A DNA stretch of 64,000 nt from Rhodosorus marinus CCMP1338. Lineage: Eukaryota; Plantae; Rhodophyta. Location: assembly GCA_029953675.1 (NCBI GenBank), contig JAMWBK010000010.1:1302001-1366000 (forward strand), read 5' to 3'. A model generated the notes under the pieces. That model worked only from the letters and a program-made list of their open reading frames with translations. It searched no databases and was not told the DNA's origin. Positions 25,320-57,600 of this stretch are shown in pieces (position 1 is the stretch's first letter; every line of letters starts with the position of its first letter). Made by a program: the position numbers and the translations under genes.

Positions 25320-27689
25320 ATGGGAATGAGCTTTGTTTTTCCTGGTGGTTTTCTCCAGGAAACTGGGAACTCTCCACGAAAGAGAAGACCAAGATGCGGC
25401 AGCAGTGGTGGCTTTATTCAGCAATTGGGAGTTTCTGGACGGGTTGGAAGAACTGACCCGATATGTGGTTTGAGCAGTAACGAAGTGGGAGATTGGCTTG
25501 ATGATCGAGACACGTTGGATGATCGTGTGGGGTTCTCCAAAGATGATTACCTCACGCAGCCGAAAAAAAATCCTGGTGATCGGCTGCCTATTCCCCGAAA
25601 ACCTTGGGAGGGTAAGAAGTTATTCATTCCAGATGAGCTGCTGGCAGACCCTGTGTTCAAGTGGGAAGTTCAGGGGCTGATGGTTCAGCACTTTCGAGGA
25701 CGTCTCGACGAATCTTATTCAAAGGAAATTGATGCATATAGAAAGGACAGGCCTGAGGTAACGGAGGATGACCTGAAGGCACGTGCGGAATACCAAAAGG
25801 CAGCGAAGAAGGCAATTCAAGAGAATCCGCAAGACTGGTTGCTGAGAAATTGGAGGACAAACGAACCTGTTGACCTCGACAGTGTGTATAAGAATCCACT
25901 GCTTATGTTGAACACCTCCAAAGACTCTCTTAGGACTCTTTCAACACAGCCCCCGATGATAGAGCCAGAGGTTTTGGAAGAACTGGACGAGCTGGCAATT
26001 GACACTGTTCTGAAGCTGAAGCAAGACGAGCAGGAGAAAGGCTTGAACCTTGTGGAGTGTACAAAGTGCGGAAGACTTGCAGAAAGTAGAGAGTTGGTAC
26101 AGAACGGAAAGTGCGCGTTCTGCAACAGGGATGTGGCAGAGCAGAAGAGGCAAGCAATGGTGGAGGCGATGGAAAGCGAGGAAGGCTCAGAACCGCAAGA
26201 ATCGAAGCTTCCACGTCGGAACTGGCCAACTGTACCTTCGCGCAACTATCACATGACAGGGAGCTTCCTGATGCGGTACTTGCGCAACAAGATGCCGCTG
26301 GATATCAGCCAGGCGAATTGGTTGCTATGGATCGATCCGTCAAACTATTCAGAGATCCCTGGCGAGAGCTCGTTTCTTTCAGCAGAAGAGCGCTACCTTG
26401 ACGGGCACCTGAAACCAGCCTCAAAGCTTCTCTTCGAAGCCTCTCGAGAGTTAGACGACGAGGAAGAACTGGAAGATTTCGAAGAGGGAGAGGATATTGA
26501 ATACTTGGACAGAATGTACGATGGATGCGATGGTTGTGCAAATGTCATGGAATCGATTGAGTGCCTTCAGACAAGGGGTAAGTTACATTTCAAGCAAACT
26601 CTACCGGTGACGTTGGACTTGAGCAGCGCTCTGATGTCCTTGATGTAAATACTTGCAGTCCACGAGCTGAACAGCACAATGTACAGAAAAGACGACGTCT
26701 GTCTGGCCAGTGGTGCCGCAGGGGCATTTCGCGCAGCCTTGGAAGTTCTGTGCAGTCGGGGGGAGAACATACTTGTTCCAGAGCCAACGGACGGAATGTT
26801 TGAGTCCGTTGCTGAGTCGCTGGGTGTTGAGGTTCAATACTATCAAGTGGTCAGGCACAACCGCGAGTGGGGATTCGACCTGCAGGAGATTGCGCAGATG
26901 ATGAACTCTCATACTGCTGCCTTGATCGTAAAAAACCCGAACAGTATAGGCGGCTTTTTACACTCGAGGGAAGATCTCGCAGGAGTTTGCGATTTGTGCG
27001 GCAATTGCGGTGTGCCGATCATAGCTGACGAGGTCTTATCTGACTTTGTCTTTGATAGCTCCTGGATATCTCGTCTAGAAGAAATGGGAATCCCGAACCC
27101 GTCCAAGTCCCCCAAGTTCGTTCCGACGATGGAAGCTGCGGATGGAAAAGTACCCGTGCTCACTATCGGCGAAACTAGTCATCGATTCCAAGCTCAGCTG
27201 CTTCGGCTGGGTTGGCTTCTTGTTTCGGCGGATCCCTCTCAGATGAGCGAAGAAGTTCGATTTGCGCTGCGCACTGTCGGTACTGCTCAGCTTCCGCATG
27301 ATCTCCATGTCGTAGCGGGTTCGTTGTCCCAGTTCCTCGACCCGAGGAGCATCGCAGATGCCAGAGCCACGGTGGACAACATAAGTCAGAGCCTTACTTC
27401 CCTAATCTCTAACATACACCGCGACACTTTCGAGTGCTCTATCCCAAGTGCGGGAATGAGCGTTCTAGTGAAGGTGGACTTGGAGCGTTTCGACTTCAGC
27501 TCGACAAGAGACTTTACGGAATACCTCCTCAAGGAGCAGAACATTGGCATTGTTCCGGGTTCCGTTTTCCACGTTGATAAGTACTGCTTCCTGCAGCCCA
27601 CAACTTCCGCTAGGATGGGCCAGGCGTGCTACGAATTTCGACTGTTCCTGGACAGACTCTCCAAAACGCTGGATAAGAAACGGGCATAG
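25320..27689 (+). CDS. 762-aa plastid-targeted protein: unknown N-terminal domain, C4 zinc ribbon, and degenerate class I aminotransferase (TAT-like) fold; exons 25320-26577 and 26659-27689
   Basis: Phase-1 intron 26578-26658 (GTAAGT..TTGCAG, 81 bp) joins the 442-aa and 336-aa ORFs in frame. The TAT-like alignment (DPS..Y, DDVCLASG, GENILVP.P, LIVKNP, PIIADEV, RLGW, EQNIGIVPG) begins upstream of the intron. Confidence 0.8.
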
Positions 27690-28248: not shown

Positions 28249-29567
28249 TCAGGAAAGGTCCCCGGTCCACAACTTCCAGCAGAAGCTCTGAAGTGTCCAT
28301 ACCATAAAGATTGAGCCCAGGGCCGCCACTGCATATGCAGCGGCGTTGGCTACGGCCAAGTTGGCTGGTTTGGCGCTGCGTTCTAGTGCCTTGACGTACA
28401 GCAGTGGAGGAATGATGAATGTTTGCAGGGTGTCCGTTACTCCACCAGCCAAGCCTATCAGCAGGGCGAAGTTTGGAACAGCGATTGCAACGGAAGAGAT
28501 GAACATGACAAGCACTGATCTGATCAAGTTCTTCGTGAGCAAGTTCTTCTTCGTGACGCGAGGGTTGTCACCCAGTATCGCTATTTCGACGTATTCTCGG
28601 GCTGGAGCAAGCATCAGAGTGAACGTTATAGCCAGATCCACTGATAAACCGACAGCCGTGAGTGTGAACAAATAACCCGAACCAACGTTTCGCAGAACGT
28701 TGTCCTTGATAGAAGATCCGTAGGCCTAACCATGAGCGACAAGAAGCATTCCTGAGGATTCTTTTCACAATAGGGCTGGCCTCGGAATGACAAAGAAGCG
28801 AGGACACACCGGCTTACCGCGTAGCAACCGAGTCCGAAGATTATGTTAATCAGCGCGCAAAAAGAAAAGCTCGCTGGAATAACGGTAGAGGTGAACTCGT
28901 CAGGGTGCTGCATCTCCCTCTCGATAGGAAGTGCGACATAGTGGATGCAGAACAAGAAAACAGCGGGGCCCCAGAAAAGTGGGAAGGTTTGCGAGGTGAA
29001 AGGAACAAAGCTCGGGCTTGGTTTCATTCCTCGTTCAAGCCAAATAGTAGAAGCATCAACCGCAACCGCCGCCATTGCCAAGAAAAAACATATGTTTCCG
29101 AAAATAGACCAAAAGGCAAGATGTTTCCACGTTCTGACCCAGCTTAGAAAGATGAAACAGGGCACTATCATCAAAATGACGTGCGTTGTTCTGATATCCA
29201 AAATCTCGGAGAATAGACCTCCAATAAATGTTAAATACCCAGCGCATGCTCCAAAGCACGAAAGAAACGTCGCAGTTCTTACAGTTACAGACCACTTATG
29301 TCCTAAAAGCTCGCCTGCAACCTCCGCATAGTTCATATTATACTCCGTACTCAAAATTCTCTTGGAAACTACCAACATCCAGACTGTCGCTGTTGCAACC
29401 AACGCGACAACACTCACTCCAATACCTCCACCTACATATCCAGCTTGCGCAAAAGCCCATGGTAAAGCAAATGATCCAGAACCTAGAATAAGCTTCACAA
29501 CATTCGCCATACCAGCTAACCTCTCCCCTCGAATGTCATCAACACTTCCATGACTAGTTCCAGCCAT
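28249..29567 (-). CDS. Amino acid transporter, AAAP/SLC36-38 (AVT3-like) family; intron 28817-28726
   Basis: NVVKLILGSGSFALPWAFAQAGYVGG, FPLFWGPAVFLFCIHYVALPIEREMQHP.EF, LIGLAGG...FIIPPLLY. Multiple TM helices. Confidence 0.9.
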
Positions 29568-29633
29568 CTTCCCGTTTCCTACTCTGCACACGCACCCCCA
29601 AAACCACGAAAGAAACAGATTCGCTGTTTCCTA

Positions 29634-31256: not shown

Positions 31257-32627
31257 TCATGGCACAATAACATCTGGGCCGTAATTCCACCTGTATACAT
31301 AGCTAGCCCCTCGGTCCTCCTTTCCCTCCGGCCCGGTGTCACATTTCGGACAACCAATAACAATATGTCGGTCGTCAATGCTGACACCCTTTCCAAACTC
31401 GTCCTCTGGTTGCGCGGTAACTATTCCGTTGCTGTCAGTCCTGTATATTTTCTTCACGATTCGCCACTCGTAGCCCTGGCACCTAACAGCAACGTAAACT
31501 GCTCCGCTTCTGGTACCCGATTTGTTGTCCCCCCACGCAGAAACCACAAGAACATTCCCGTAGCGAGACACTCGCTGCCCGAAGAAACTAGGTCCCTTTC
31601 TGTCCGGGTAGAAACTTCCAATTGTCTTGTATTCACCGTCGATCTCCTGATATAAGTACACGGATCCAGTATTATACCCTAGTTCGCTCCTTCCTCTTTC
31701 TCCACCAACAACGGCGATGCTTCCAAGAGTATGGACACCTTCGCCAAAGTGCTGCTCGTTGAACATCGGTCCAGCAGGACTGTTGGGCCAGTCCTCGTGC
31801 TCTTCCTTGTGTGGGTTAAACTTCTTGGTCAACTTCCACAAACCCTTAGCGTTTCTTGTGTAAAGATAAGCTCGCCCGACCCTCGCACTGCCTACTCTGT
31901 GCCTTGGCGATCCGACGATGAGTCGCGGAGTTAGGTTGGGGTTGGTTGTGCCGTGGAGGTGCACCTCATCTCCGTACTGGACGCTTGCAACACTTCCTCT
32001 CAATGTCTGCACAAGTTGCCATTCCCTTAAGCGTTTTCGCTCATATATATAGACAGCTCCGGCCTTGGTAATACCCTCATCCGGATCGTCCTGTCTACGG
32101 GCTCCGATAACGGCGGTTTCACCCTCAACTGCAACGGCGTACCCGAAGTACGCGGATTTCATTCCATCACCGTTTTCAGAAGGCGCGCTGAACGTGAACG
32201 TTCGTTTCCATTCGCCGTCGACGAGCTCGAACATATTGGCGGAGCCGCTCCTAGGACCGAAGAATCTCGTATCGAAAGGATGACCACCAATGATTCGATA
32301 TTTCGTCCCATCGGACCATGCGTCAACGTTCAGACCGAAGTACCCCCCATGAACTCGCTCATCGGGGAGAAGCTCGTCCTCGTAAATCCACTTTCCCTTC
32401 TCCTTTCGGAAAACCCACATCCCGCCTTGCCAGCCCTGGTACCCATAGCCACCCATAACCAGACGATTCTTAAACACTCGGACGTAGTGCCCGGCAAAAA
32501 TAGGCCCAGCATTCGGCCCGGCTCCTTCTGGAAGCAGCTCGCTCTGTCCAGTCAGCTCAATCGATGGACAGCGCAAACCAAGAACGCCGGCAACAAGCAG
32601 CAACCCAGCACAAACTAAAACTTTCAT
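31257..32627 (-). CDS. Secreted 7-bladed FG-GAP (integrin-alpha-like) beta-propeller, 456 aa, intronless
   Basis: Signal peptide MKVLVCAGLLLVAGVLG. Seven FG...(V/I)G.P...GAVYI-type repeats, e.g. YFGYAVAVEGETAVIGAR..GAVYIY and EFGKGVSIDDRHIVIGCP..GASYVY. Confidence 0.88.
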   Translation of the reverse strand: MKVLVCAGLLLVAGVLGLRCPSIELTGQSELLPEGAGPNAGPIFAGHYVRVFKNRLVMGGYGYQGWQGGMWVFRKEKGKWIYEDELLPDERVHGGYFGLNVDAWSDGTKYRIIGGHPFDTRFFGPRSGSANMFELVDGEWKRTFTFSAPSENGDGMKSAYFGYAVAVEGETAVIGARRQDDPDEGITKAGAVYIYERKRLREWQLVQTLRGSVASVQYGDEVHLHGTTNPNLTPRLIVGSPRHRVGSARVGRAYLYTRNAKGLWKLTKKFNPHKEEHEDWPNSPAGPMFNEQHFGEGVHTLGSIAVVGGERGRSELGYNTGSVYLYQEIDGEYKTIGSFYPDRKGPSFFGQRVSRYGNVLVVSAWGDNKSGTRSGAVYVAVRCQGYEWRIVKKIYRTDSNGIVTAQPEDEFGKGVSIDDRHIVIGCPKCDTGPEGKEDRGASYVYRWNYGPDVIVP

Positions 32628-34578
32628 TTTACTAAACAATTTTAGCCAACCGTATCCACCACAAAACCAGTCACTCAAGCACAGCCGCCATCGTAATCTG
32701 AACAGACCTCCGCTTAGACTCACCTCCTCCCCCTCACTCCTCCAATCCTTCACTCCGTCTTCATATGCGTATCGCGACCAGTCCTCACCGCCCAATGATT
32801 CAACAAAGTGTCAACAAACGTTCCCAAAACTCTCCAACTAGGAACGGCAAAATCCCCAACCTTCCACCTAATTTCGATCCAGTTCACCTCTTTTCTTCTC
32901 TTTTTTTTTTTCAAATCTTGTGTTTCTGTGTTTTCCAACTACAGTCAGTTATACAAAAATCTATTAAATTCTCTAAGCTCGCAAAAATCATATACATCAA
33001 ATTTTTAAACAGAAAATTAACCGTTCCCCGAAAATGATAAGATGCTGGTTAATTTCACTAACATGAATATTTGAAATGTTTCTCTGTTAGCTCCTCTCTT
33101 TTTTATCTTGTGAAAAACAAAGACAATCAATCAAACTGAACCGACTTCGACCGCGTTACGCATTTTTCAATAATAATTTGATAGAAGAGCAAACATCCAA
33201 ATAAATTAGAATTATTCTTGAAAATCAGGAAGTAAAAATAAATAAATATAGTAAATGGCTAGTAAACTTTTGCTCATTTCTGGCTAGCACACCACATTCT
33301 TCCCTTTTTTTTCCTCAAGCCTTTGCAAAAGTTGTTTCGTTTGTTATTTTTTCACGTATACGTTGTGACCTTTTATCAATCGAATTCGGCAGCTTATAAT
33401 ATGATAAAGATAATATATATATAAACTTTAGACCATATTATTTAGTTTTGACTCGCTTGTTCACAAAATAATGTACTAGTACCAGTTTTAGAGGCCTGGG
33501 AAGATATTGTCGACATAAGTAAGGAACAAAGGTTCTTGTTTTAGTACGCTCATATCGGATAAAATGTAAATTAGTGGGGTTTATTTAATAGGGTATAAAT
33601 GAATGATTTAATGTTGTTGGTGTACGTCCAAGAATTTTGACTCTGGATTTCTCTGACAAAGATACCAGAAGGCCGTACTGATGGTGCTGGGTTTGCGCCC
33701 GATTGGATAGACTGCGACCAATGAAGTATTGGTAGTTGCTCACTGGCACTTCTTTTATACAATGGGGATTAAAATTTTGCTTAAAGATCCAGGATGGATT
33801 GCAGATAGTTGCTGAGGGTTTTGCAGCACAGGATAGCCAGCAAGTTTGTCCGACTGAATGAGTGCGGTGCATTTTGCTCTGAGGATGTTCGTCTACACCG
33901 TATGGTTTGAGCTTGTTAGGGGACACAACTGCATCTCGGAAATTTTTTTTCTCCCACTCTCGTGGACGTGTAGCCTCTGGTAGTGAGGACTAACACCTGA
34001 GTGTCTCACCGGGAATTTTCCGAGCATGGGAAGCCACATGGTTATAACCATTTGCTGCTCTCGTCGAGGCAAACCCGGACGATCTTTGAAAGCAGGTAGC
34101 GGATACTTCTGTGGTAGAGCATGTGATATGGAGCGGAAACTCCACAACGTCGAAGTTGCCACCGTGGAACTGAATTCACAGTCGTCCCCTAGGAGCTCCG
34201 TTGGTTTTGCCCTCATCGAATAATCAAACGTTTCCAGCTGACCAAACTGCCAGAAAATGTAGCCTTTGTCATGTCTTTGAGGGCGATGCAATTTGCTCAA
34301 GTACTGAACAACTTACCCCTTTCCAACTTCAATACTTCGTGCAAACGTGGAAACGTACAAACATAGCAAAGGATGAATGCACTATTGTGTAGGAGTTGTC
34401 GCGAAGCCGATGGCTTAATGGGCATTGTCAGGAAACCTCGAGCATGATGCGAGAACCCGACCGCGGCGCGATACGAATTATTCTTCTTTCTGACACATAT
34501 TTTTCAGCACGTGGCGAAAAGCTGAGTCCGTACTTTGTTCTCGGGCTAGAAAATTTTGCATGGTACAAATCACTTTGT

Positions 34579-41851: not shown

Positions 41852-44800
41852 GGAGCTGATGGCCACCACTGTCTATTCTTGGGGTGTTGAGCGAACGTCA
41901 TGATTTAATAGATCAGGAACGTTCTCCATAAGAAGAAACTAGTACCTCTCGTTTAAGGGTACTCAGCCCTCCGACTTGATCCCCAACCTCCCCAGTCCCT
42001 CCTTAAACGTGCACGCACCACCTTTTTTTAACCGCCAAGTCATCACTCTGCACAGGACTATAAAATTTCTCTATGAATCATCATACTCTATTTTTATGAG
42101 CAATTCTACTATTCCCAAAGTACCAGAATCCTGTAAATTCCATCTTGGGATCTGTTGATTCGTTACGCATTCATGTTGTTTGCCTAGTCTCACCAATAAA
42201 CGTCCGTCTATATTCGGACCGACAGGGCTCTCTCATCAAATTATTTCTAATTTCTTGGACCGCGAAGATTCCGTATGAGCTCTATTGGACTACGCTAAGT
42301 ATTATTGATTGACATACAAAATCTTTCTACCAATGAAAACAAGAACAGTTGTAGCTACCAAAATTTCTATTCTCTTATGTAAAATTGTAAGAATCTTCGC
42401 CCGAACGAGGATGAACGATTTTCGTGTGTTTTTTTTCCCGAATTTGAACCTTAAGATCTGAAATAGAGTAAAACGGTGAGCCTTTGGACCTCTTTGAGAA
42501 TCTCCGTTTCCTGTCCTGTCCCAAATGTGTTTTTTTGAAAAATGAACCCAACCAATGGCGTTTGAATGTTCCCACATGCCTTTGTACGATCCCTATTGGC
42601 CAAGGATATTCTTCCCTTCAAGTTTCCTTTCTCTGAAGATTCAAAGGCGTTCAAAAACATCCACTAGAAGAGAAACCCCTCCAAATTCTTTTTTGCCGCT
42701 GCCAGGTCAGATATATTAATCTTCTTAAATAAATTCTGCAGTCAGCACCCCAAGGGTCTTCTCGACGAAAGACGTTTTGACAGCTGGCCTTTTCTGGAAA
42801 GGTTTTACGAATATAAATGTGACACATGCTTCACCGGGGAACTTTTTTTATTGGAATCTCTTTTTTTTAAGGCTCTTCAATGGAATCCTGCCAATGAGAT
42901 ATCCAATCAGTATGGACGAGGGATGATTTCTGATGCCGACAATTACTGTATTTACAAAACTTTTACCATCGCTAGCAGTTCAAAAATGATGGTAGGCGGC
43001 GATATCACAACCAATCAAAGAAAACCCACCTCGAATTGCAAGAAACCAGATATTTCCAACAGCTCTCTTGTTTTTTATATGAAGCGGAATTGTTTTGTAG
43101 TTAATGGAATATTTTATTGGTTGTACTGGTTGCTGTGTTTTTGTGATCCACCTTTCTTTCCCCCACAACGCTTTCTGAGAAACGCAGCACTCGTTCGAAT
43201 CTGGTTTCCAAATGAGGATTCCGTAGTGAGATCGTTGATTTCTTCACATGATAGCCACCCCCCCCTCTTTCTTCATCGTACTGCTGCCAAAGCGCGTCCC
43301 AATTTGTTCTTTTGGTCTGTGTGCGATTCAAGTGTTGCTTTCTATGGAATCCATTGTTTTCCAAGTTTTATGAATAAAATAATTGCTATTACGATTTGGA
43401 CGAATAGAAAATCGAGAGAAAACTGGAAAGATACGGTGACATTCCATGATCCAATTTAAAAAACAAAAAATGGGAATTTTTTCCTACCAAAATTCCTATC
43501 GAGACCGGACGATTCCCTACGAAATTTCATCCATAATTGATACATCTGGCAACCCTTCCCGGTCTAGCTTCAAATTGCCGCTTTTTTAAATGAAAAAAAT
43601 ATCAGATTGCCCGTGCATTCTATATTGGAAAAAAAAGGCAAAAGACTCGGAGGGGGGAATTGGTGAGAGTCGTTCTCTTACATGTTTCTCGCATCAATTA
43701 TTTCTTCTTCATTTCTTAATATCTACACACACCCGTGTTTTTTCATGGTTTCCGCAACAGCACGTCCTCGATTTTCTATCAAATAATTCTTCAACAAAAT
43801 CATGAAAAAAGTATCACCAAGGATAGAGAACTCACAGGTTCAGTTAGAAACTGGCTTTTCCTTATTAAGCCAAGTTTTACCATTTTTCAAAGCTTCTTTC
43901 CACTTTTAGCTGTTGTTTTCTGCCCACCATGATCCAGACGCAGGACAACCATGAAAGGTTTTTCCTAAAAAAATTAGTTTTCCTAGACATCCGGAACAGC
44001 AAGCAGCCTTTAACATCAATTAACCGAGCAAATAGAAACAGGGGTTATATTCCTATATGAGTTCGCAATTGTACAGATCAAAGGGTAGCGAATGCATCGG
44101 ATAACTACAGAATATGCTTTTAATTATTTACATAATAGTGTTCTTTTGTATGTTTTACGAGGGGTAAATGATATAACGAAATGAAGGAATCTCCCAACCG
44201 TACCCCCCCTCGTTGAATATTGAACAACCCTATTAATGGGGATTTCTTTTCTTCCTGTTTTTTTTTTCTTTTCGAAATTCGGTTGACGAAATTGCATTGA
44301 ACGGGTAAAAGAAAGTCCCATTAGATTCAGCAAGAGCCAAAAAAAAGGGACACAGATTGTGCCGATTTGTTTTTTCCCCTTTACTTCTTTGAGCAGGCGA
44401 GTGATGAGGCAGGGGAAAGACGCGTATGTGTGTAGGGGTTGGAAGAGGTTTTTCTTTTTGGTGGGTGCGGAACAGGAGAGTAGGCAATGTGAACCGAAAT
44501 AAGGGTTGGGCAGAGAGAGGTGTAGTTGGGAGGTGAAGTTAGGGTTTTGTTTTTGACGGTGAGTCAGGGTAACTATAGTGGATTAATTGTTTAGAATCTT
44601 CTTTGGGTATTCGTTTGTCTTTACTATGTCCATGACTCGGTCTGGGGGACATGCTCCGGTAGGGCTTTTGACTGTGTACGGGTGCGGGAGGGTATAGGTT
44701 TGGGAGGGGAGAGGGGCGAGGTGGTGGTGAGATCGGTTGGAGGAAGCTGGCTGATGTAGATGAGAGAATTTTTGTAGTTCTGGTTGAAAGTAGCTTCGAG

Positions 44801-54630: not shown

Positions 54631-57600
54631 ATGGAGTTGGGAATAGATATACATGGGCTGGAGGCCATGTGCAGAGCTATGTATGAAGGACAGGATCAAA
54701 AGCAGCGAGAGGAAGCTGAGAAGACCCTGATGCCGCTAGGAGAATCAGCAGATAATGTTGTCGCTTGCTTTTCGATAATTTCAGGCTCGTCCGAGCCACT
54801 CGCTCAGGTTTTCGCTGCGGCTTGCCTCCTGAAAATCGCGGACAACCACTGGACGAGAATACCGGAAGCACAGCGCGTCGAGCTCTGGAAGTTTTCTTAT
54901 TCCCTCCTTGCAGAAAGAGGTTAGTAGATCTTCTAGCCGGGCCGCGGTCTCCCCTTCCAGAGTCTCGGACAAATTGTCGGAACAGCGTTTGCTCTGCATT
55001 CCCTAGCTCGATCGCAAAGAGGGAACCGATTCCAACGTGGAGAAGAACTCGGAGTATGCGTCAAACTTGTCTGAAACATTCTCTCCCCTGTTCCTTTGCA
55101 ATGGTATCGTTCAGGTCCTGGCCTAGCGAGTTATGTTGTTGCAGACGTTACAGCCGTGTTCTGCAGGGTGACAAAATTGGGATGGAACGATGAAGGTCCC
55201 TATAGATCAATTGTAGATGATGTTGCTAAATTTTTGGAGGCTTCAGAGGAGCACTGTGACATTGGCCTTATTATCCTGAACAGAATAACGATTGAAATGA
55301 ATCAGTCAACACCTGCGATTCGGAAGTTCTTCTCCCAGGCCCAGAACAGAAAGGTCAGCTCGTTTCGTCCGACCCCTGGCTGATGGGGTTAGTGGAACGA
55401 CAGCGACTTACGGATCGATATCTTCTTCTATGTGTGTTTCTACGATTGCAGGTCGCTACGTCGTTCCGGGACCTGCTTCTGTTAAGGATTTTCGAGCTGT
55501 CACTTTCCACACTAACTCGGTTGTCACCACCGCCTGCTCACTCAGCGCTCCGACTGCGTGCTCTCCAACTAGCCCAATCTTGCCTCGGCTTCGACTTTAT
55601 TGGGGCTTCTTTCGATGAGGCTAGCGAAGATATGGGCACCATTCACGTGCCCGTCGCGTGGAGAGCTGTGATTGAGGACCCGAAGACGCTTACCCTTTTT
55701 TTTGACACTTACAATGAATCGGCAAGCGTGAACGGGGAAGTGGCGGGGAAAACCATCGAGTGCCTGGTACAGATGTCGTCCATCAGGCGCTCGATCTTCT
55801 CCACTGATGAGAAGCGGCTCAACTATCTCTACCAGCACATGCGAGCTACGGTTGAAGTGTTGTCGAACAATAGGGGCTTGGATCAGCCGGAGACCTACCA
55901 CCATTTCTGTCGCTGGTTGTCCAGGTTGAAAGCTAACCACGAGCTCTCCGAGTTGATGGGTTCAGACTTGTTTCCCGACTGGATCCGAAATGTCGCGGAG
56001 CTCACTCTCCATTGCATTTCGAGCGACTGGTCGATAGTGGGTAACTCGCTGTATTACCTGTTGAACCTTTGGAGTAAACTGGTGCACCCCATATCGAAGC
56101 TGAAGAGGAACTCGAGTACTTCTCTAGAGACGTACGTCGAGAAGATCGTCCAGATGTACGTGACGTCGCGGTTGCATGCCCTGCAAAGTGAGACGTCACC
56201 GTCGGACTGGGACAACCTTGATGACGAAGAGAATATAGCTCAGGAGGAGTTTGCTGAGCACCTGGAGAGCATTCCCGCAATCTTTCGACTGCACTACGAC
56301 AAGACGGCCCAATTTTTGATCCAGTTGATCGATCCCTTGCTTGAGCAATACAAGGCTGGCATTGCCAACAACGTCCCGGCCGTGGATCGATTTCTGCTCG
56401 AAAGGCACTTGGCGTGGTTAGTTCGAGTATCGGGATCTGTTGTGGGTGGTAGGATTATCTCTACCTCATCCGAGAACCAAGAACATAGTGATGGTGAGCT
56501 GTCCTCTCGCGTTTTTCAGCTGATGATCTACACTGTCGACGAGGATCGGAGTCGAAGCAAGGTGAGCCCACCAAAGCAAACGCTAGTATTCCTGGGCAAC
56601 TAACGAGTCTTTGTGCGGCCGAGTTGCTGAGGGATTTTGTGCACCCGGGATCCATTGTTCAAGCACTAACTCGCTTTTGAACTCTCTTCGGCAGATGGGA
56701 GTTGGGAAACAACCGCGGGGTATGATTGAACTGGATGGGGCCATCGTTGATTTTATACAGTCCTTCAGGAAAGCGTACATTGGGGAGCAAGCGGTCAGCA
56801 CATCTAAAGTCTACGTGCGAATGTCGGAGCGATTGGGAATATCCGATCATATCGTAGTGCTCGATGTCGTCGCATCAAAGATTGCCTGCGTTCTGCAGAA
56901 GTACGGGATCGTTTGCGGAACTGCGGTGGTCAAGAAGACCTTGCAACTGCTCTCCGATCTCGCCTTTGGCCACTCGTCCGGGCGGTTGCTTGGCAAGCTG
57001 AAGACGATTCGCTCGATGCTGAACAACCACGGGGAAGAGTCGTTTCTGTTTATGAAGGGCTCGTCGATGGGACAGCAAAGGACACTCTTCTACCAGACGC
57101 TGACTAAGATACTGTTTTCCCTGATCAGCCTGGGCGAATTTGACCCTGAAGCTGAGTTCGAGCGCTTCCTTCAACCTCTGCAGTTAAGACTTGAGGCCAT
57201 CGCGGCTGTACAATCAGACGAAATGATGATCAACGACCCGGAGGTGTCGAACGCATTGATCGGAGCCCTGCGCGACCTCCGAGGGATAGTAACAGCCACA
57301 CTTTTGAAGAAGACGTACACCATGTTCTTCGATTGGTTTTATCCCCAACATGTCCCTCTTCTCTACCGTGCAATAAGGGTAGGTAGACTAACGCTCTTTT
57401 CTGTCCACGGTGCCTAGCGAGAAAGCTGGATGCTTCGGTTGCCCGCTTCTCGTCTGCGAGCTTATTCAAGATCCATCCCTAGGACAGGGAGCGCTGCCTA
57501 AGTCGCCAGCAGATACTTGCTCACATTTGTTTCTGAGCTAAGACGCGAATAACTTTGTGTTTCTATGTACACTTCCAGGTCGCAGCTGCCGCTGGGTCAT

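What the first reader, a model, noticed from the sequence alone, without database searches (positions are those of the whole stretch)
25320..27689. Plastid-targeted pseudoenzyme: unknown domain + C4 zinc ribbon + catalytically dead aminotransferase fold
Seen: the two ORFs join in frame across a canonical 81-bp intron (26578-26658), and TAT-like sequence (WIDPSNY, YDGCDG) already starts in the first ORF, so this reads as one 762-aa protein with an MSFV transit-like start, about 250 aa of unrecognised sequence and CTKC-x14-CAFC. Known: tyrosine aminotransferases have GGLAKRW..GWRLGW (Schiff-base Lys), NPSNP, DEIY and a C-terminal substrate-binding Arg. Here these read GETSHRFQAQLLRLGW (Lys to His), KNPNSI, DEVL and DKYCFL, while the scaffold aligns almost without gaps. 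Inference: a retained but non-catalytic fold-type-I dimer used as a ligand sensor or scaffold in the plastid, comparable in logic to the MocR/GabR sensor domain but fused to a zinc ribbon. I know of no described example.
Basis: partly seen in the sequence, partly recalled or inferred. Interest (0 to 1): 0.75.

Follow-up and report, generated by a model that had tools for sequence, protein, structure and literature searches.

The report
Dead tyrosine aminotransferase with zinc ribbon
A red alga (Rhodosorus marinus) carries an expressed, evolutionarily conserved gene for a probably plastid-bound protein that keeps the shape of tyrosine aminotransferase and the zinc ribbon that red-algal versions of that enzyme carry, but has rebuilt the vitamin-B6 pocket so that it almost certainly no longer transaminates; its new job is unknown.

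Summary
ORF1 (25320-26648) and ORF2 (26679-27689) join across an 81-nt GTAAGT...CAG intron (26578-26658). The 762-aa product is identical to the annotated Rhodosorus marinus protein KAJ8901921.1, and a transcript-derived protein from a second strain spans the junction.

The C-terminal 460 aa model as a complete tyrosine aminotransferase (TAT) fold. Invariant cofactor and substrate residues are replaced: Lys258 to His, Phe140 to Asp/Glu, Tyr225 to Leu, Gly255 to Glu, Arg386 to Phe/Tyr; Asn194 and Tyr70* are lost.

Orthologs in Purpureofilum and two unnamed assemblies share these changes, the zinc ribbon and, where the sequence reaches that far, a clade-specific helical N-domain. pN (0.37-0.44) is far below pS (0.73-0.85).

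New here: the zinc ribbon is inherited. Every long TAT-like hit, and all named ones are red algae, has CxxC-x14-18-CxxC ahead of an intact TAT domain. Rhodosorus also has an ordinary 441-aa TAT without the ribbon.

Best reading: a Stylonematophyceae-specific pseudoenzyme derived from the red-algal zinc-ribbon TAT, probably plastid-targeted, using a remodelled but conserved pocket to bind something else. That function, like localisation, is inferred. No description was found in the searched literature.

The parts
25320..26577 (+). Exon 1 (aa 1-419 plus the first base of codon 420)
   Evidence: ORF. The model is identical to KAJ8901921.1. A transcript-derived protein starts with the same MGMSFV.
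26578..26658 (+). 81-nt phase-1 intron, GTAAGT...TTGCAG, containing the in-frame TAA at 26646-26648
   Evidence: It is removed in the NCBI model and in MMETSP transcript-derived P0151.
26659..27689 (+). Exon 2 (rest of codon 420, aa 421-762, stop at 27687-27689): core of the aminotransferase fold
   Evidence: Pfam PF00155 E 3.7e-24; TIGR01265 E 2.5e-47; AF2 pLDDT 84-98.
25320..25490 (+). Presequence (about aa 1-57): MGMSFVFPGG..., Gly/Ser/Arg-rich with only 3 acidic residues in 56; putative Phe-type red-algal plastid transit peptide
   Evidence: Composition. It differs at 27% of positions between the two Rhodosorus strains, against 5.8% in the AT core. AF2 pLDDT is below 35. Motif criterion from PMC7038456. 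Localisation was not tested.
25605..26039 (+). Clade-specific helical N-domain (aa 96-240) with invariant motifs LFIP-EL, NP..WLLRNWRT..P..DSVY and EELDELAI
   Evidence: Conserved in Rhodosorus, Purpureofilum and L001. No Pfam, NCBIfam or PDB match. It does not align with the N-extensions of the active zinc-ribbon TATs.
26058..26123 (+). C4 zinc ribbon, CTKC-x14-CAFC (aa 247-268)
   Evidence: All four Cys are invariant in the clade. It aligns with the ribbon of the active red-algal TATs (hhalign E 2.7e-5). AF2 models it as a beta-hairpin pair, pLDDT 73-82. There are only weak hits to zf-C2HC5 and ribosomal zinc ribbons.
26217..26577 (+). Degenerate N-terminal arm of the TAT fold (aa 300-419): RNWP..., WIDPSNY (= S-x-GDPT-x-Y), a 21-aa acidic insert (26448-26510), and YDGCDG (= NGY-S-x-S, Tyr70* replaced by Cys)
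   Evidence: Alignment. Foldseek covers nearly all of human TAT (427 columns, target TM 0.85). AF2 confidence is low here, pLDDT 42-67.
26790..26792 (+). Asp464 in place of the PLP-stacking Phe (AAT position 140)
   Evidence: D/D/D/E/D in the clade against Phe in 18 of 18 zinc-ribbon TATs and 25 of 26 standard TATs.
26931..26954 (+). KNPNSIGG in place of NNPSNPCG: Asn194 and Pro195 lost
   Evidence: Asn194 becomes S/N/R/R/R and Pro195 becomes I/V; both are invariant in the active proteins.
27024..27038 (+). ADEVL: Asp222 and Glu223 kept, Tyr225 replaced by Leu546
   Evidence: Leu is invariant in the clade; Tyr is invariant in 44 active proteins.
27057..27119 (+). Clade-specific insert (SSWISRLEEMGIPNPSKSPKF) after the Asp222 strand
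   Evidence: Absent from mouse, human and Leishmania TAT. Present with W...KFVP in all clade members.
27168..27188 (+). GETSHRF: Glu591 (position 255), Ser593 (257) and His594 in place of the Schiff-base Lys258 (codon CAT at 27180-27182); Arg602 (= Arg266) follows in LRLGW
   Evidence: E, S, H and R are invariant in all five clade sequences.
27579..27596 (+). KYCFLQ: Phe730 in place of the substrate-carboxylate Arg386
   Evidence: F/F/Y/F/Y against Arg in 44 of 44 active proteins.

Best explanation
This is one nuclear gene of the red alga Rhodosorus marinus, with two exons and one 81-nt intron. It encodes a 762-aa pseudoenzyme found so far only in Stylonematophyceae and two unnamed assemblies. 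It descends from the red-algal plastid tyrosine aminotransferase, which carries an N-terminal extension with a C4 zinc ribbon. In this lineage the protein kept the Phe-type presequence, the zinc ribbon and the whole fold-type-I aminotransferase fold, and it gained a helical N-domain of about 145 aa. The PLP and substrate pocket was rebuilt: Lys258 to His, stacking Phe140 to Asp/Glu, Tyr225 to Leu, Gly255 to Glu, Arg386 to Phe/Tyr, with Asn194, Ser110 and Tyr70* lost. Asp222, Ser257 and Arg266 stayed. These changes remove the Schiff-base Lys, the ring stack, the O3' hydrogen bonds and the carboxylate clamp, and they put new acidic groups where the cofactor ring and phosphate sit. The protein therefore most likely neither binds PLP in the classical way nor transaminates. 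The replacement residues are themselves invariant and the gene is under purifying selection, so the pocket is probably still used, now to bind a different ligand or a metal. The zinc ribbon and N-domain would then couple that binding to a partner. Catalysis is left to the ordinary 441-aa TAT of the same genome. Shown: gene structure, expression, conservation, fold, residue replacements and ancestry of the zinc ribbon. Inferred: loss of PLP binding and activity, plastid location, and the binding or regulatory role.
For: Gene model and splice. Fold: AF2 pLDDT 84-98 over aa 410-762; Foldseek finds human TAT 3dyd_B at E 3.8e-24, target TM 0.85 over 427 columns. Residue replacements against 18 zinc-ribbon TATs and 26 standard TATs: with Tyr70*; the first-shell residue list comes from PMC3823064. 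Orthologs with the same N-domain, ribbon and SHR motif: Purpureofilum P0162 (33% identity over 95% of the length) and L001 (N-domain 39%, AT core 46%). L002 has the AT core plus the conserved neighbouring transporter. Selection: pN 0.37-0.44 against pS 0.73-0.85 for both the AT core and the N-domain; between strains the AT core differs at 5.8% of positions and the presequence at 27%. Pocket still constrained: 7 of 12 former first-shell positions are invariant against 77 of 317 elsewhere, Fisher p = 0.014. Family score: TIGR01265 gives 161.6 and 139.3 bits against a cutoff of 292.45, while Rhodosorus P0247, Galdieria and Gracilariopsis TATs score 428-465. Ribbon ancestry: every TAT-like hit of 630 aa or more in the set has a CxxC...CxxC match, while three hits of 577-586 aa have none. 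The ribbons align at hhalign E 2.7e-5. All named members are red algae. Active ribbon-less TAT in the same genome: P0247, NDN08_007726.
Against: No biochemical data exist. Asp222, Ser257 and Arg266 survive, and His-for-Lys is catalytic in the PMP-dependent dehydratases ColD and E1 (PMC8987622), so some cofactor chemistry is not excluded. First-shell positions lie in the structural core, so their conservation may partly reflect folding rather than binding. The tree cannot place the clade: the stem is 2.4 substitutions per site and the branch uniting it with red-algal TATs has support of only 26. Descent from the zinc-ribbon TAT therefore rests on shared architecture and a 34-column ribbon alignment at 74% probability. 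Synonymous sites are saturated, so no true dN/dS is available. Only four independent lineages are known. A second transcript-derived product (P0152) covers ORF2 alone.
Confidence: 0.55

Rival explanations
1. Prozyme-like partner. The dead protein pairs with the active 441-aa TAT of the same genome (P0247) in a fold-type-I heterodimer, and tunes or tethers its activity through the zinc ribbon and N-domain. Precedents are the Lys-less Ser4 subunit of the Serratia SerTA aminotransferase and, from my own knowledge, the trypanosome AdoMetDC prozyme.
For: Fold-type-I aminotransferases are obligate dimers (established knowledge), and the dimer fold is modelled as intact. An active TAT without a ribbon, which also starts with a Phe-type presequence (MDPLLFCG...), is encoded in the same genome. 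Ser4/Ser5 shows that a Lys-less fold-type-I paralog can be required for the activity of its partner (PMC11726168).
Against: The residue that a subunit normally lends to its partner's active site, Tyr70*, is lost (Cys in Rhodosorus, Ala in Purpureofilum), and its surroundings are the least conserved and least confidently modelled part of the fold. Identity to P0247-type TATs is only about 20-25%, so the interface may no longer match. No interaction data exist.
Confidence: 0.2
2. Changed chemistry rather than a dead enzyme. The invariant His258 acts as a general base on a non-covalently held PMP or PLP, as in ColD and E1, or the new Asp/Glu140-Glu255-His258 cluster binds a catalytic metal, giving a new enzyme.
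For: His-for-Lys is catalytic in the fold-type-I 3-dehydratases ColD, E1 and SpnQ (PMC8987622). His258, Glu255, Arg259 and Leu225 are invariant, and Asp222, Ser257 and Arg266 are kept.
Against: As I recall their structures, ColD and E1 keep the rest of the cofactor cradle; the review read here says only that they bind PMP. Here the ring-stacking Phe, Asn194, Tyr225 and Ser110 are gone, and two acidic side chains are added where the ring and phosphate sit. The protein is a TAT derivative, not a member of the DegT/DnrJ/EryC1 family. A cluster with a single His is not a recognisable metal-enzyme motif.
Confidence: 0.15
3. Two separate genes or transcripts: ORF1 (unknown domain plus zinc ribbon) and ORF2 (truncated aminotransferase-like protein starting at Met427).
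For: A transcript-derived product, P0152 (Transcript_17889, 339 aa), starts exactly at MYRKDD. ORF2 has its own ATG.
Against: Transcript-derived P0151 and the NCBI model join the ORFs. The 756-aa Purpureofilum ortholog is a single protein. In L001 both parts lie on one strand of one contig. The TAT fold begins about 120 aa before the end of ORF1, so ORF2 alone would be an incomplete fold. P0152 is most simply the ORF called on an intron-retaining isoform.
Confidence: 0.05
4. A decaying duplicate (unitary pseudogene) of TAT that still has an open frame by chance.
For: Many catalytic residues are lost. Branches are very long: the stem is 2.4 and internal branches 1.1-1.7 substitutions per site, against 0.2-0.4 in the active clade.
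Against: The frame is open over 762 codons in at least four lineages that are only 33-46% identical. pN is far below pS. The gene is expressed. The replacement residues are invariant.
Confidence: 0.02

Closest known systems
Red-algal zinc-ribbon tyrosine aminotransferases, e.g. 'Tyrosine aminotransferase [Gracilariopsis chorda]' (P0182, 857 aa), Galdieria sulphuraria XP_005707036 and G. partita GJQ12422 (P0012), Compsopogon MMETSP0312 (P0207), and Eucheuma, Gracilaria, Agarophyton and Pyropia proteins
   Same: Phe-type presequence, a long N-terminal extension with one CxxC-x14-18-CxxC zinc ribbon, and a C-terminal TAT fold.
   Different: Those proteins keep every catalytic and PLP residue (SKQF...GWRLGW, NPSNPCGS, DEVY, F-x-R-I-V) and pass TIGR01265. 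They lack the LFIPEEL/WLLRNWRT/EELDELAI N-domain, the acidic insert and the 21-aa insert after Asp222. In the literature searches run here I found no description of this architecture either.
MocR/GabR-type regulators (fold-type-I aminotransferase-like effector domain fused to a DNA-binding domain)
   Same: An aminotransferase fold reused for something other than metabolism and fused to a small N-terminal module.
   Different: From my own knowledge, MocR proteins are bacterial, carry a GntR-type winged helix-turn-helix, keep the Schiff-base Lys and bind PLP. Here there is no wHTH, Lys is His, and the match to a MocR-like model is marginal: NF052290 gives 38.7 bits against a cutoff of 487.
Ser4 of the SerTA heterotetramer, Serratia sp. 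ATCC 39006 (PMC11726168)
   Same: A fold-type-I aminotransferase paralog that lacks the catalytic Lys yet is retained and functional as a non-catalytic subunit.
   Different: Ser4 is a truncated bacterial sugar-aminotransferase homolog encoded next to its active partner. The protein here has a full-length fold, extra domains and no linked partner gene. Heteromer formation is untested.
ColD / E1 / SpnQ nucleotide-sugar 3-dehydratases (PMC8987622)
   Same: Fold-type-I proteins in which the conserved Lys is replaced by an invariant His.
   Different: They are active PMP enzymes of the DegT/DnrJ/EryC1 family. From my own knowledge their cofactor cradle is otherwise intact, whereas here it is largely dismantled, and the parent family is TAT.
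Antizyme inhibitor (a dead ornithine decarboxylase homolog) and trypanosomatid prozymes (from my own knowledge, not checked here)
   Same: PLP-enzyme or metabolic-enzyme paralogs that lost cofactor binding or catalysis and became regulators of the pathway they came from.
   Different: The fold (type III) and partners differ. They serve only as a functional precedent.

Membership tests
Tyrosine/nicotianamine aminotransferase subfamily (TIGR01265; class I-gamma) | Whole-protein HMM score at or above the curated cutoff (292.45 bits) | tested here: not met
   P0001 scores 161.6 bits and Purpureofilum P0162 139.3 bits. The controls P0247, P0012 and P0182 score 428, 450 and 465 bits.
Tyrosine/nicotianamine aminotransferase subfamily (TIGR01265; class I-gamma) | Schiff-base Lys (AAT Lys258) in S-K-x-(F/W) | tested here: not met
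   His in all five clade sequences; Lys in 44 of 44 active relatives.
Tyrosine/nicotianamine aminotransferase subfamily (TIGR01265; class I-gamma) | PLP cradle: stacking aromatic 140, Asn194, Tyr225, Tyr70*, Asp222, Arg266 | tested here: not met
   Position 140 is Asp/Glu, 194 is Ser/Asn/Arg, 225 is Leu and 70* is Cys/Ala. Only Asp222, Ser257 and Arg266 are kept. The residue list is from PMC3823064.
Tyrosine/nicotianamine aminotransferase subfamily (TIGR01265; class I-gamma) | Substrate alpha-carboxylate Arg386 | tested here: not met
   Phe or Tyr in the clade; Arg in 44 of 44 active proteins.
Tyrosine/nicotianamine aminotransferase subfamily (TIGR01265; class I-gamma) | Fold-type-I aminotransferase fold closest to TAT | tested here: met
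   Foldseek finds 3dyd_B (human TAT) at E 3.8e-24 and target TM 0.85; T. cruzi, Leishmania and mouse TAT come next. PF00155 E 3.7e-24.
Tyrosine/nicotianamine aminotransferase subfamily (TIGR01265; class I-gamma) | PLP binding and transaminase activity | not testable with these tools
   Needs purified protein.
Red-algal zinc-ribbon TAT architecture (informal, defined here) | One CxxC-x(14-18)-CxxC ribbon in the extension N-terminal to the TAT fold | tested here: met
   aa 247-268; aligns with the ribbon of the active proteins, hhalign E 2.7e-5.
Red-algal zinc-ribbon TAT architecture (informal, defined here) | Phe within the first few residues (Phe-based red-algal plastid presequence) | tested here: met
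   MGMSFVFPGG here and MGTLGFTW in Purpureofilum, compared with MLSFV-, MHAFVP-, MAAFIP- and MPAAAFVP- in the active proteins. Criterion from PMC7038456. Import itself was not tested.
Red-algal zinc-ribbon TAT architecture (informal, defined here) | Phylogenetic nesting within red-algal TATs | tested here: inconclusive
   In the best tree the clade sits on the red-algal side of a branch, but with support of only 26 and a stem of 2.4 substitutions per site.
MocR/GabR regulators | N-terminal GntR-type winged helix-turn-helix plus a PLP-binding Lys | tested here: not met
   No wHTH or GntR hit in Pfam or NCBIfam. Lys is replaced by His.
ColD/E1-type His-dependent PMP dehydratases (DegT/DnrJ/EryC1) | His in place of Lys within an otherwise intact cofactor cradle, and membership of PF01041 | tested here: not met
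   His is present, but PF01041 is not among the Pfam hits listed at E up to 1 and the cradle is dismantled.
Non-catalytic partner subunit (Ser4-like or prozyme-like) | Stable heteromer with an active paralog of the same organism | not testable with these tools
   An active paralog exists (P0247). The interaction was not tested.

The most novel reading that the evidence does not exclude
The zinc-ribbon extension carried by plastid TATs in the named members of five red-algal classes (Florideophyceae, Bangiophyceae, Cyanidiophyceae, Compsopogonophyceae, Stylonematophyceae) has a second, non-catalytic job, such as binding a plastid nucleic acid or protein to regulate aromatic amino acid or prenylquinone metabolism. 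In Stylonematophyceae the two jobs were separated. Catalysis went to a ribbon-less 441-aa TAT. The ribbon function went to this dedicated pseudoenzyme, whose former PLP pocket (Asp/Glu140, Glu255, His258, Arg259, Leu225) was rebuilt into a sensor for a metal or a cationic or aromatic metabolite. This would be a natural dissection of a moonlighting enzyme.
Probability: 0.2. Interest if true: 0.75.

Novelty: new variant of a known kind. Interest (0 to 1): 0.5.

Why it matters
Catalytically dead relatives of enzymes are common, but dead fold-type-I aminotransferases with a conserved, rebuilt pocket are rarely documented. This one comes with a clean evolutionary contrast: active zinc-ribbon TATs in other red algae, and in the same genome a ribbon-less active TAT next to a ribbon-bearing dead one. 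That contrast makes two questions testable. First, what is the zinc-ribbon extension of red-algal TATs for, given that I found no description of it? Second, what does a PLP pocket become once Lys, the ring stack and the carboxylate clamp are replaced by His and acidic residues? Practically, the protein should not be annotated as a tyrosine aminotransferase in metabolic reconstructions of red algae.

Tried and rejected
1. The word-seeded homolog search with the 419-aa exon-1 product found nothing. Its length window (up to 733 aa) excluded the 756-765-aa orthologs. Repeating it with the 762-aa database protein found Purpureofilum P0162.

2. The metagenome scan first failed because the alignment had no conserved stretch. 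With the AT-core alignment it returned only an unrelated aminotransferase at 26% identity (L003). I therefore have no nucleotide sequence of the second Rhodosorus strain and no unsaturated dN/dS.

3. A scan of bacterial and archaeal genomes for the N-domain motifs gave 180 pattern matches but no relative.

4. Sequence and profile searches of the N-terminal half against PDB gave nothing usable. There was only a non-significant beta-catenin-like match (E 0.055) and weak zinc-ribbon ribosomal proteins eL37, eL43 and uS14 (E 0.08-3).

5. AlphaFold of the N-domain alone, from a 4-sequence alignment, had pLDDT 55 and pTM 0.35. That is too poor for a fold search, so none was run.

6. Two trees could not place the clade because of long-branch effects.

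7. hhalign between the N-domain and the active N-extensions aligned only the ribbon.

8. The pseudogene reading and the two-gene reading were considered and rejected (see the rival explanations).

9. Literature searches for red-algal TAT, pseudo-aminotransferases, and zinc ribbon plus aminotransferase found no description of this protein or of the zinc-ribbon TAT architecture.

10. tRNA, Rfam and tandem-repeat scans of the window found nothing.

The N-domain has therefore not been searched exhaustively.
Full report
**What is in the sequence**

The window is nuclear DNA of a eukaryote. Its larger ORFs encode MCM2, a retinoblastoma B domain, MutS domain V, exportin-7, cullin, a TLDc protein and an amino-acid transporter.

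At the reported place there are two ORFs on the + strand: 25320-26648 (442 aa) and 26679-27689 (336 aa). They lie in the same frame and are separated by one TAA at 26646-26648. GTAAGT at 26578 and TTGCAG ending at 26658 delimit an 81-nt phase-1 intron. Among all frame-preserving GT...AG pairs that remove the stop, this is the only one with a consensus donor. Another gene in the window, exportin-7, has a similar short intron (GTGAGC...CAG, 56562-56694).

**Confirmation of the gene model and the source**

An exhaustive HMMER search with the exon-2 product returned a 762-aa protein that is 100% identical over aa 421-762 (P0001). It is KAJ8901921.1, 'hypothetical protein NDN08_004125 [Rhodosorus marinus]'. 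Rhodosorus is a red alga of the class Stylonematophyceae.

A 765-aa protein predicted from an MMETSP transcript of another Rhodosorus strain (P0151) reads continuously across the junction...IECLQARVHELNSTMYRKDD.... The intron is therefore removed in vivo. A second transcript-derived product (P0152, 339 aa) starts at MYRKDD. I read it as the ORF called on an intron-retaining isoform, but I could not check this.

**The aminotransferase part**

- Exon 2 matches Pfam Aminotran_1_2 (E 3.7e-24) and the tyrosine/nicotianamine aminotransferase model TIGR01265 (E 2.5e-47), starting at profile position 94.
- The best solved relatives are mouse, human, Leishmania and T. cruzi TAT, at E 4e-29 to 4e-26.
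- An AlphaFold model of the full protein, built on a 50-sequence alignment, has pLDDT 84-98 over aa 410-762.
- Foldseek places that model on human TAT 3dyd_B with E 3.8e-24 and target-normalised TM 0.85 over 427 columns.
- In the alignment, RNWP...WIDPSNY corresponds to (D/E)xW...S-x-GDPT-x-Y, and YDGCDG corresponds to the NGY-S-x-S motif.

**The active site**

I used the first-shell list for aspartate aminotransferase (Tyr70, Gly108, Thr109, Trp140, Asn194, Asp222, Ala224, Tyr225, Ser255, Ser257, Lys258, Arg266, Arg386; PMC3823064). I compared the five sequences of this clade with 18 long zinc-ribbon TATs and 26 standard TATs.

| Position (AAT numbering) | Active TATs | This clade |
|---|---|---|
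| Lys258 | Lys | His, invariant |
| 140 (PLP-stacking aromatic) | Phe | Asp/Glu |
| Tyr225 | Tyr | Leu, invariant |
| 255 | Gly | Glu, invariant |
| Arg386 | Arg | Phe/Tyr |
| Asn194 | Asn | Ser/Asn/Arg |
| Pro195 | Pro | Ile/Val |
| Ser after position 109 | Ser | Ala/Glu/Arg |
| Tyr70* | Tyr | Cys (Rhodosorus), Ala (Purpureofilum) |

Gly108, Asp222, Glu223, Ser257 and Arg266 are kept.

The whole-protein TIGR01265 score is 161.6 bits, and 139.3 for the Purpureofilum ortholog, against a cutoff of 292.45. The ordinary Rhodosorus TAT and the Galdieria and Gracilariopsis TATs score 428-465. It includes two new acidic side chains where the cofactor ring and phosphate would sit. I infer that classical PLP binding and transamination are lost.

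**Conservation**

- A 756-aa protein of Purpureofilum apyrenoidigerum, also Stylonematophyceae, is 33% identical over 95% of the length.
- A Logan contig (L001) encodes the N-domain (39% identity, E 3e-62) and the AT core (46%) on one strand.
- A JGI contig (L002) encodes the AT core (38%) followed by the same convergent amino-acid transporter gene as in the window.
- All keep G-E-x-S-H-R, DE(V/A)L and the Phe/Tyr at position 386.
- Nei-Gojobori proportions are pN 0.37-0.44 against pS 0.73-0.85, for both the AT core and the N-domain. Synonymous sites are saturated, so this shows constraint but gives no precise ratio.
- Between the two Rhodosorus strains, 27% of the first 60 residues differ, against 5.8% of the AT core and 6.9% of the N-domain.
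- Across four lineages, 7 of 12 former first-shell positions are invariant against 77 of 317 other positions (Fisher one-sided p = 0.014).

This is not a decaying gene, and the old pocket is still among the most constrained parts. Some of that constraint could be structural.

**The N-terminal half**

- Residues 1-57 are Gly/Ser/Arg-rich with 3 acidic residues in 56 and start MGMSFVFPGG. Red algae use a Phe-based motif at the very N-terminus of plastid presequences (PMC7038456). Plastid targeting is therefore plausible but untested.
- Residues 96-240 form a predicted helical region (pLDDT 64-82 in parts). It has invariant motifs LFIP-EL, NP..WLLRNWRT..P..DSVY and EELDELAI. It has no match in Pfam, NCBIfam, PDB sequences or profiles, or bacterial and archaeal genomes.
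- Residues 247-268 are a C4 zinc ribbon with all four Cys invariant.

**The new point: the ribbon is inherited**

The exhaustive search also returned many long proteins (630-1026 aa) with the TAT domain at the C-terminus. Every one of them has a CxxC...CxxC match (CxxC-x14-18-CxxC in nearly all) in its N-terminal extension, ahead of a TAT domain. The domain reads S-K-Q-F-x4-G-W-R-x-G-W, and the 18 compared keep every catalytic residue. Three hits of 577-586 aa have no ribbon.

Many of these proteins start with Phe-type presequences such as MLSFV-, MHAFVP-, MAAFIP- and MPAAAFVP-. All members that carry an organism name are red algae: Gracilariopsis, Gracilaria, Agarophyton, Eucheuma, Pyropia, Galdieria and Compsopogon. 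Several are transcript-derived, so the architecture is not a gene-model artefact.

A profile-profile comparison of the N-terminal halves aligns only the ribbon (34 columns, E 2.7e-5, 74% probability). So the helical N-domain is specific to the dead clade.

Rhodosorus itself has an ordinary 441-aa TAT (P0247, NDN08_007726). It has all catalytic residues, a short Phe-type presequence and no ribbon. No active ribbon-bearing TAT from Rhodosorus appeared among the best 120 hits.

Trees show the dead clade as monophyletic (SH-aLRT 100) on a very long stem (2.4 substitutions per site). Its attachment is unresolved. It falls on the red-algal side of a branch in the best tree, with support of only 26.

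**Interpretation**

The best-supported reading is a pseudoenzyme, known so far only from Stylonematophyceae and two unnamed assemblies, derived from the red-algal plastid zinc-ribbon TAT. It keeps the presequence, ribbon and fold, and it gained an N-domain. Its cofactor pocket has been converted into a different but conserved site.

I favour a non-catalytic binding or regulatory role. That part is inference.

Rivals:
- A prozyme-like heterodimer with P0247. The precedent is Ser4/Ser5 (PMC11726168). It is weakened by the loss of Tyr70* and the low identity.
- A new chemistry using His258. The precedent is ColD/E1 (PMC8987622). It is weakened by the dismantled cofactor cradle.
- Two separate genes, or a pseudogene. 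Both are contradicted by the transcripts, the orthologs and pN far below pS.

**Novelty**

In the literature searches I ran, I found no paper describing either this protein or the zinc-ribbon TAT architecture. Databases name it a hypothetical protein or a generic aminotransferase-domain protein. I rate it a new variant of a known kind (pseudoenzymes derived from PLP enzymes), of moderate interest. The most interesting untested possibility is that the red-algal ribbon extension has its own function, which this lineage has separated from catalysis.

Noticed in passing
window 28249-29591 (- strand); L002 1537-2769 (-): An amino-acid transporter gene (Pfam Aa_trans, E 1e-38) lies tail-to-tail about 560 nt downstream of the dead aminotransferase. 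The same convergent pair occurs in L002, where the transporter is 62% and 49% identical over its two parts while the aminotransferase-like gene is only 38% identical. This may be conserved microsynteny or a functional link; I cannot tell which. In the window the transporter is split into two overlapping ORFs (28249-28671 and 28626-29591), so it probably has an intron.
   Followed up: partly
related proteins P0004-P0036, P0182, P0207, P0012, P0169, P0175, P0176: A family of long (630-1026 aa) TATs, all red-algal where an organism is named, with a Phe-type presequence, a poorly conserved extension holding one C4 zinc ribbon, and an apparently active TAT domain. I found no description of this architecture in the literature searched; databases call them simply 'tyrosine aminotransferase'.
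   Followed up: partly
P0152 (MMETSP Transcript_17889), corresponding to window 26679-27689: A second transcript-derived product covers only ORF2, starting at Met427. It is probably called on an intron-retaining isoform, which would end the long protein at the TAA inside the intron (26646-26648). Regulated intron retention is possible.
   Followed up: no
window 26943-26945 (codon 515): The position equivalent to the PLP-binding Asn194 is Ser in the genome strain and Asn in the MMETSP strain of Rhodosorus, and Arg in the other lineages. It appears to be free to vary.
   Followed up: yes
window 26448-26510 and 27057-27119: Two inserts are specific to the dead clade. One is an acidic run (ELDDEEELEDFEEGED...) between the GDP and former NGY motifs, present in acidic form in all lineages. 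The other is a 21-aa insert (W...KFVP) right after the Asp222 strand.
   Followed up: partly
window 55383-57417 (+): An exportin-7-like gene is split into two ORFs by a 133-nt intron, GTGAGC...CAG, at 56562-56694, in phase with both ORFs. It is a second example of the short canonical introns of this genome.
   Followed up: partly
window 42001-44000 and 32001-34000: Two stretches have lower G+C (0.389 and 0.428) than the window average of about 0.48. I did not examine them.
   Followed up: no
P0247 (Rhodosorus NDN08_007726) and P0052 (Porphyridium purpureum): The active TATs of Rhodosorus (441 aa) and Porphyridium (476 aa) lack the zinc-ribbon extension and group together in the tree (support 86). 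The ribbon has therefore been lost from, or was never present in, the catalytic TAT of these two lineages.
   Followed up: partly
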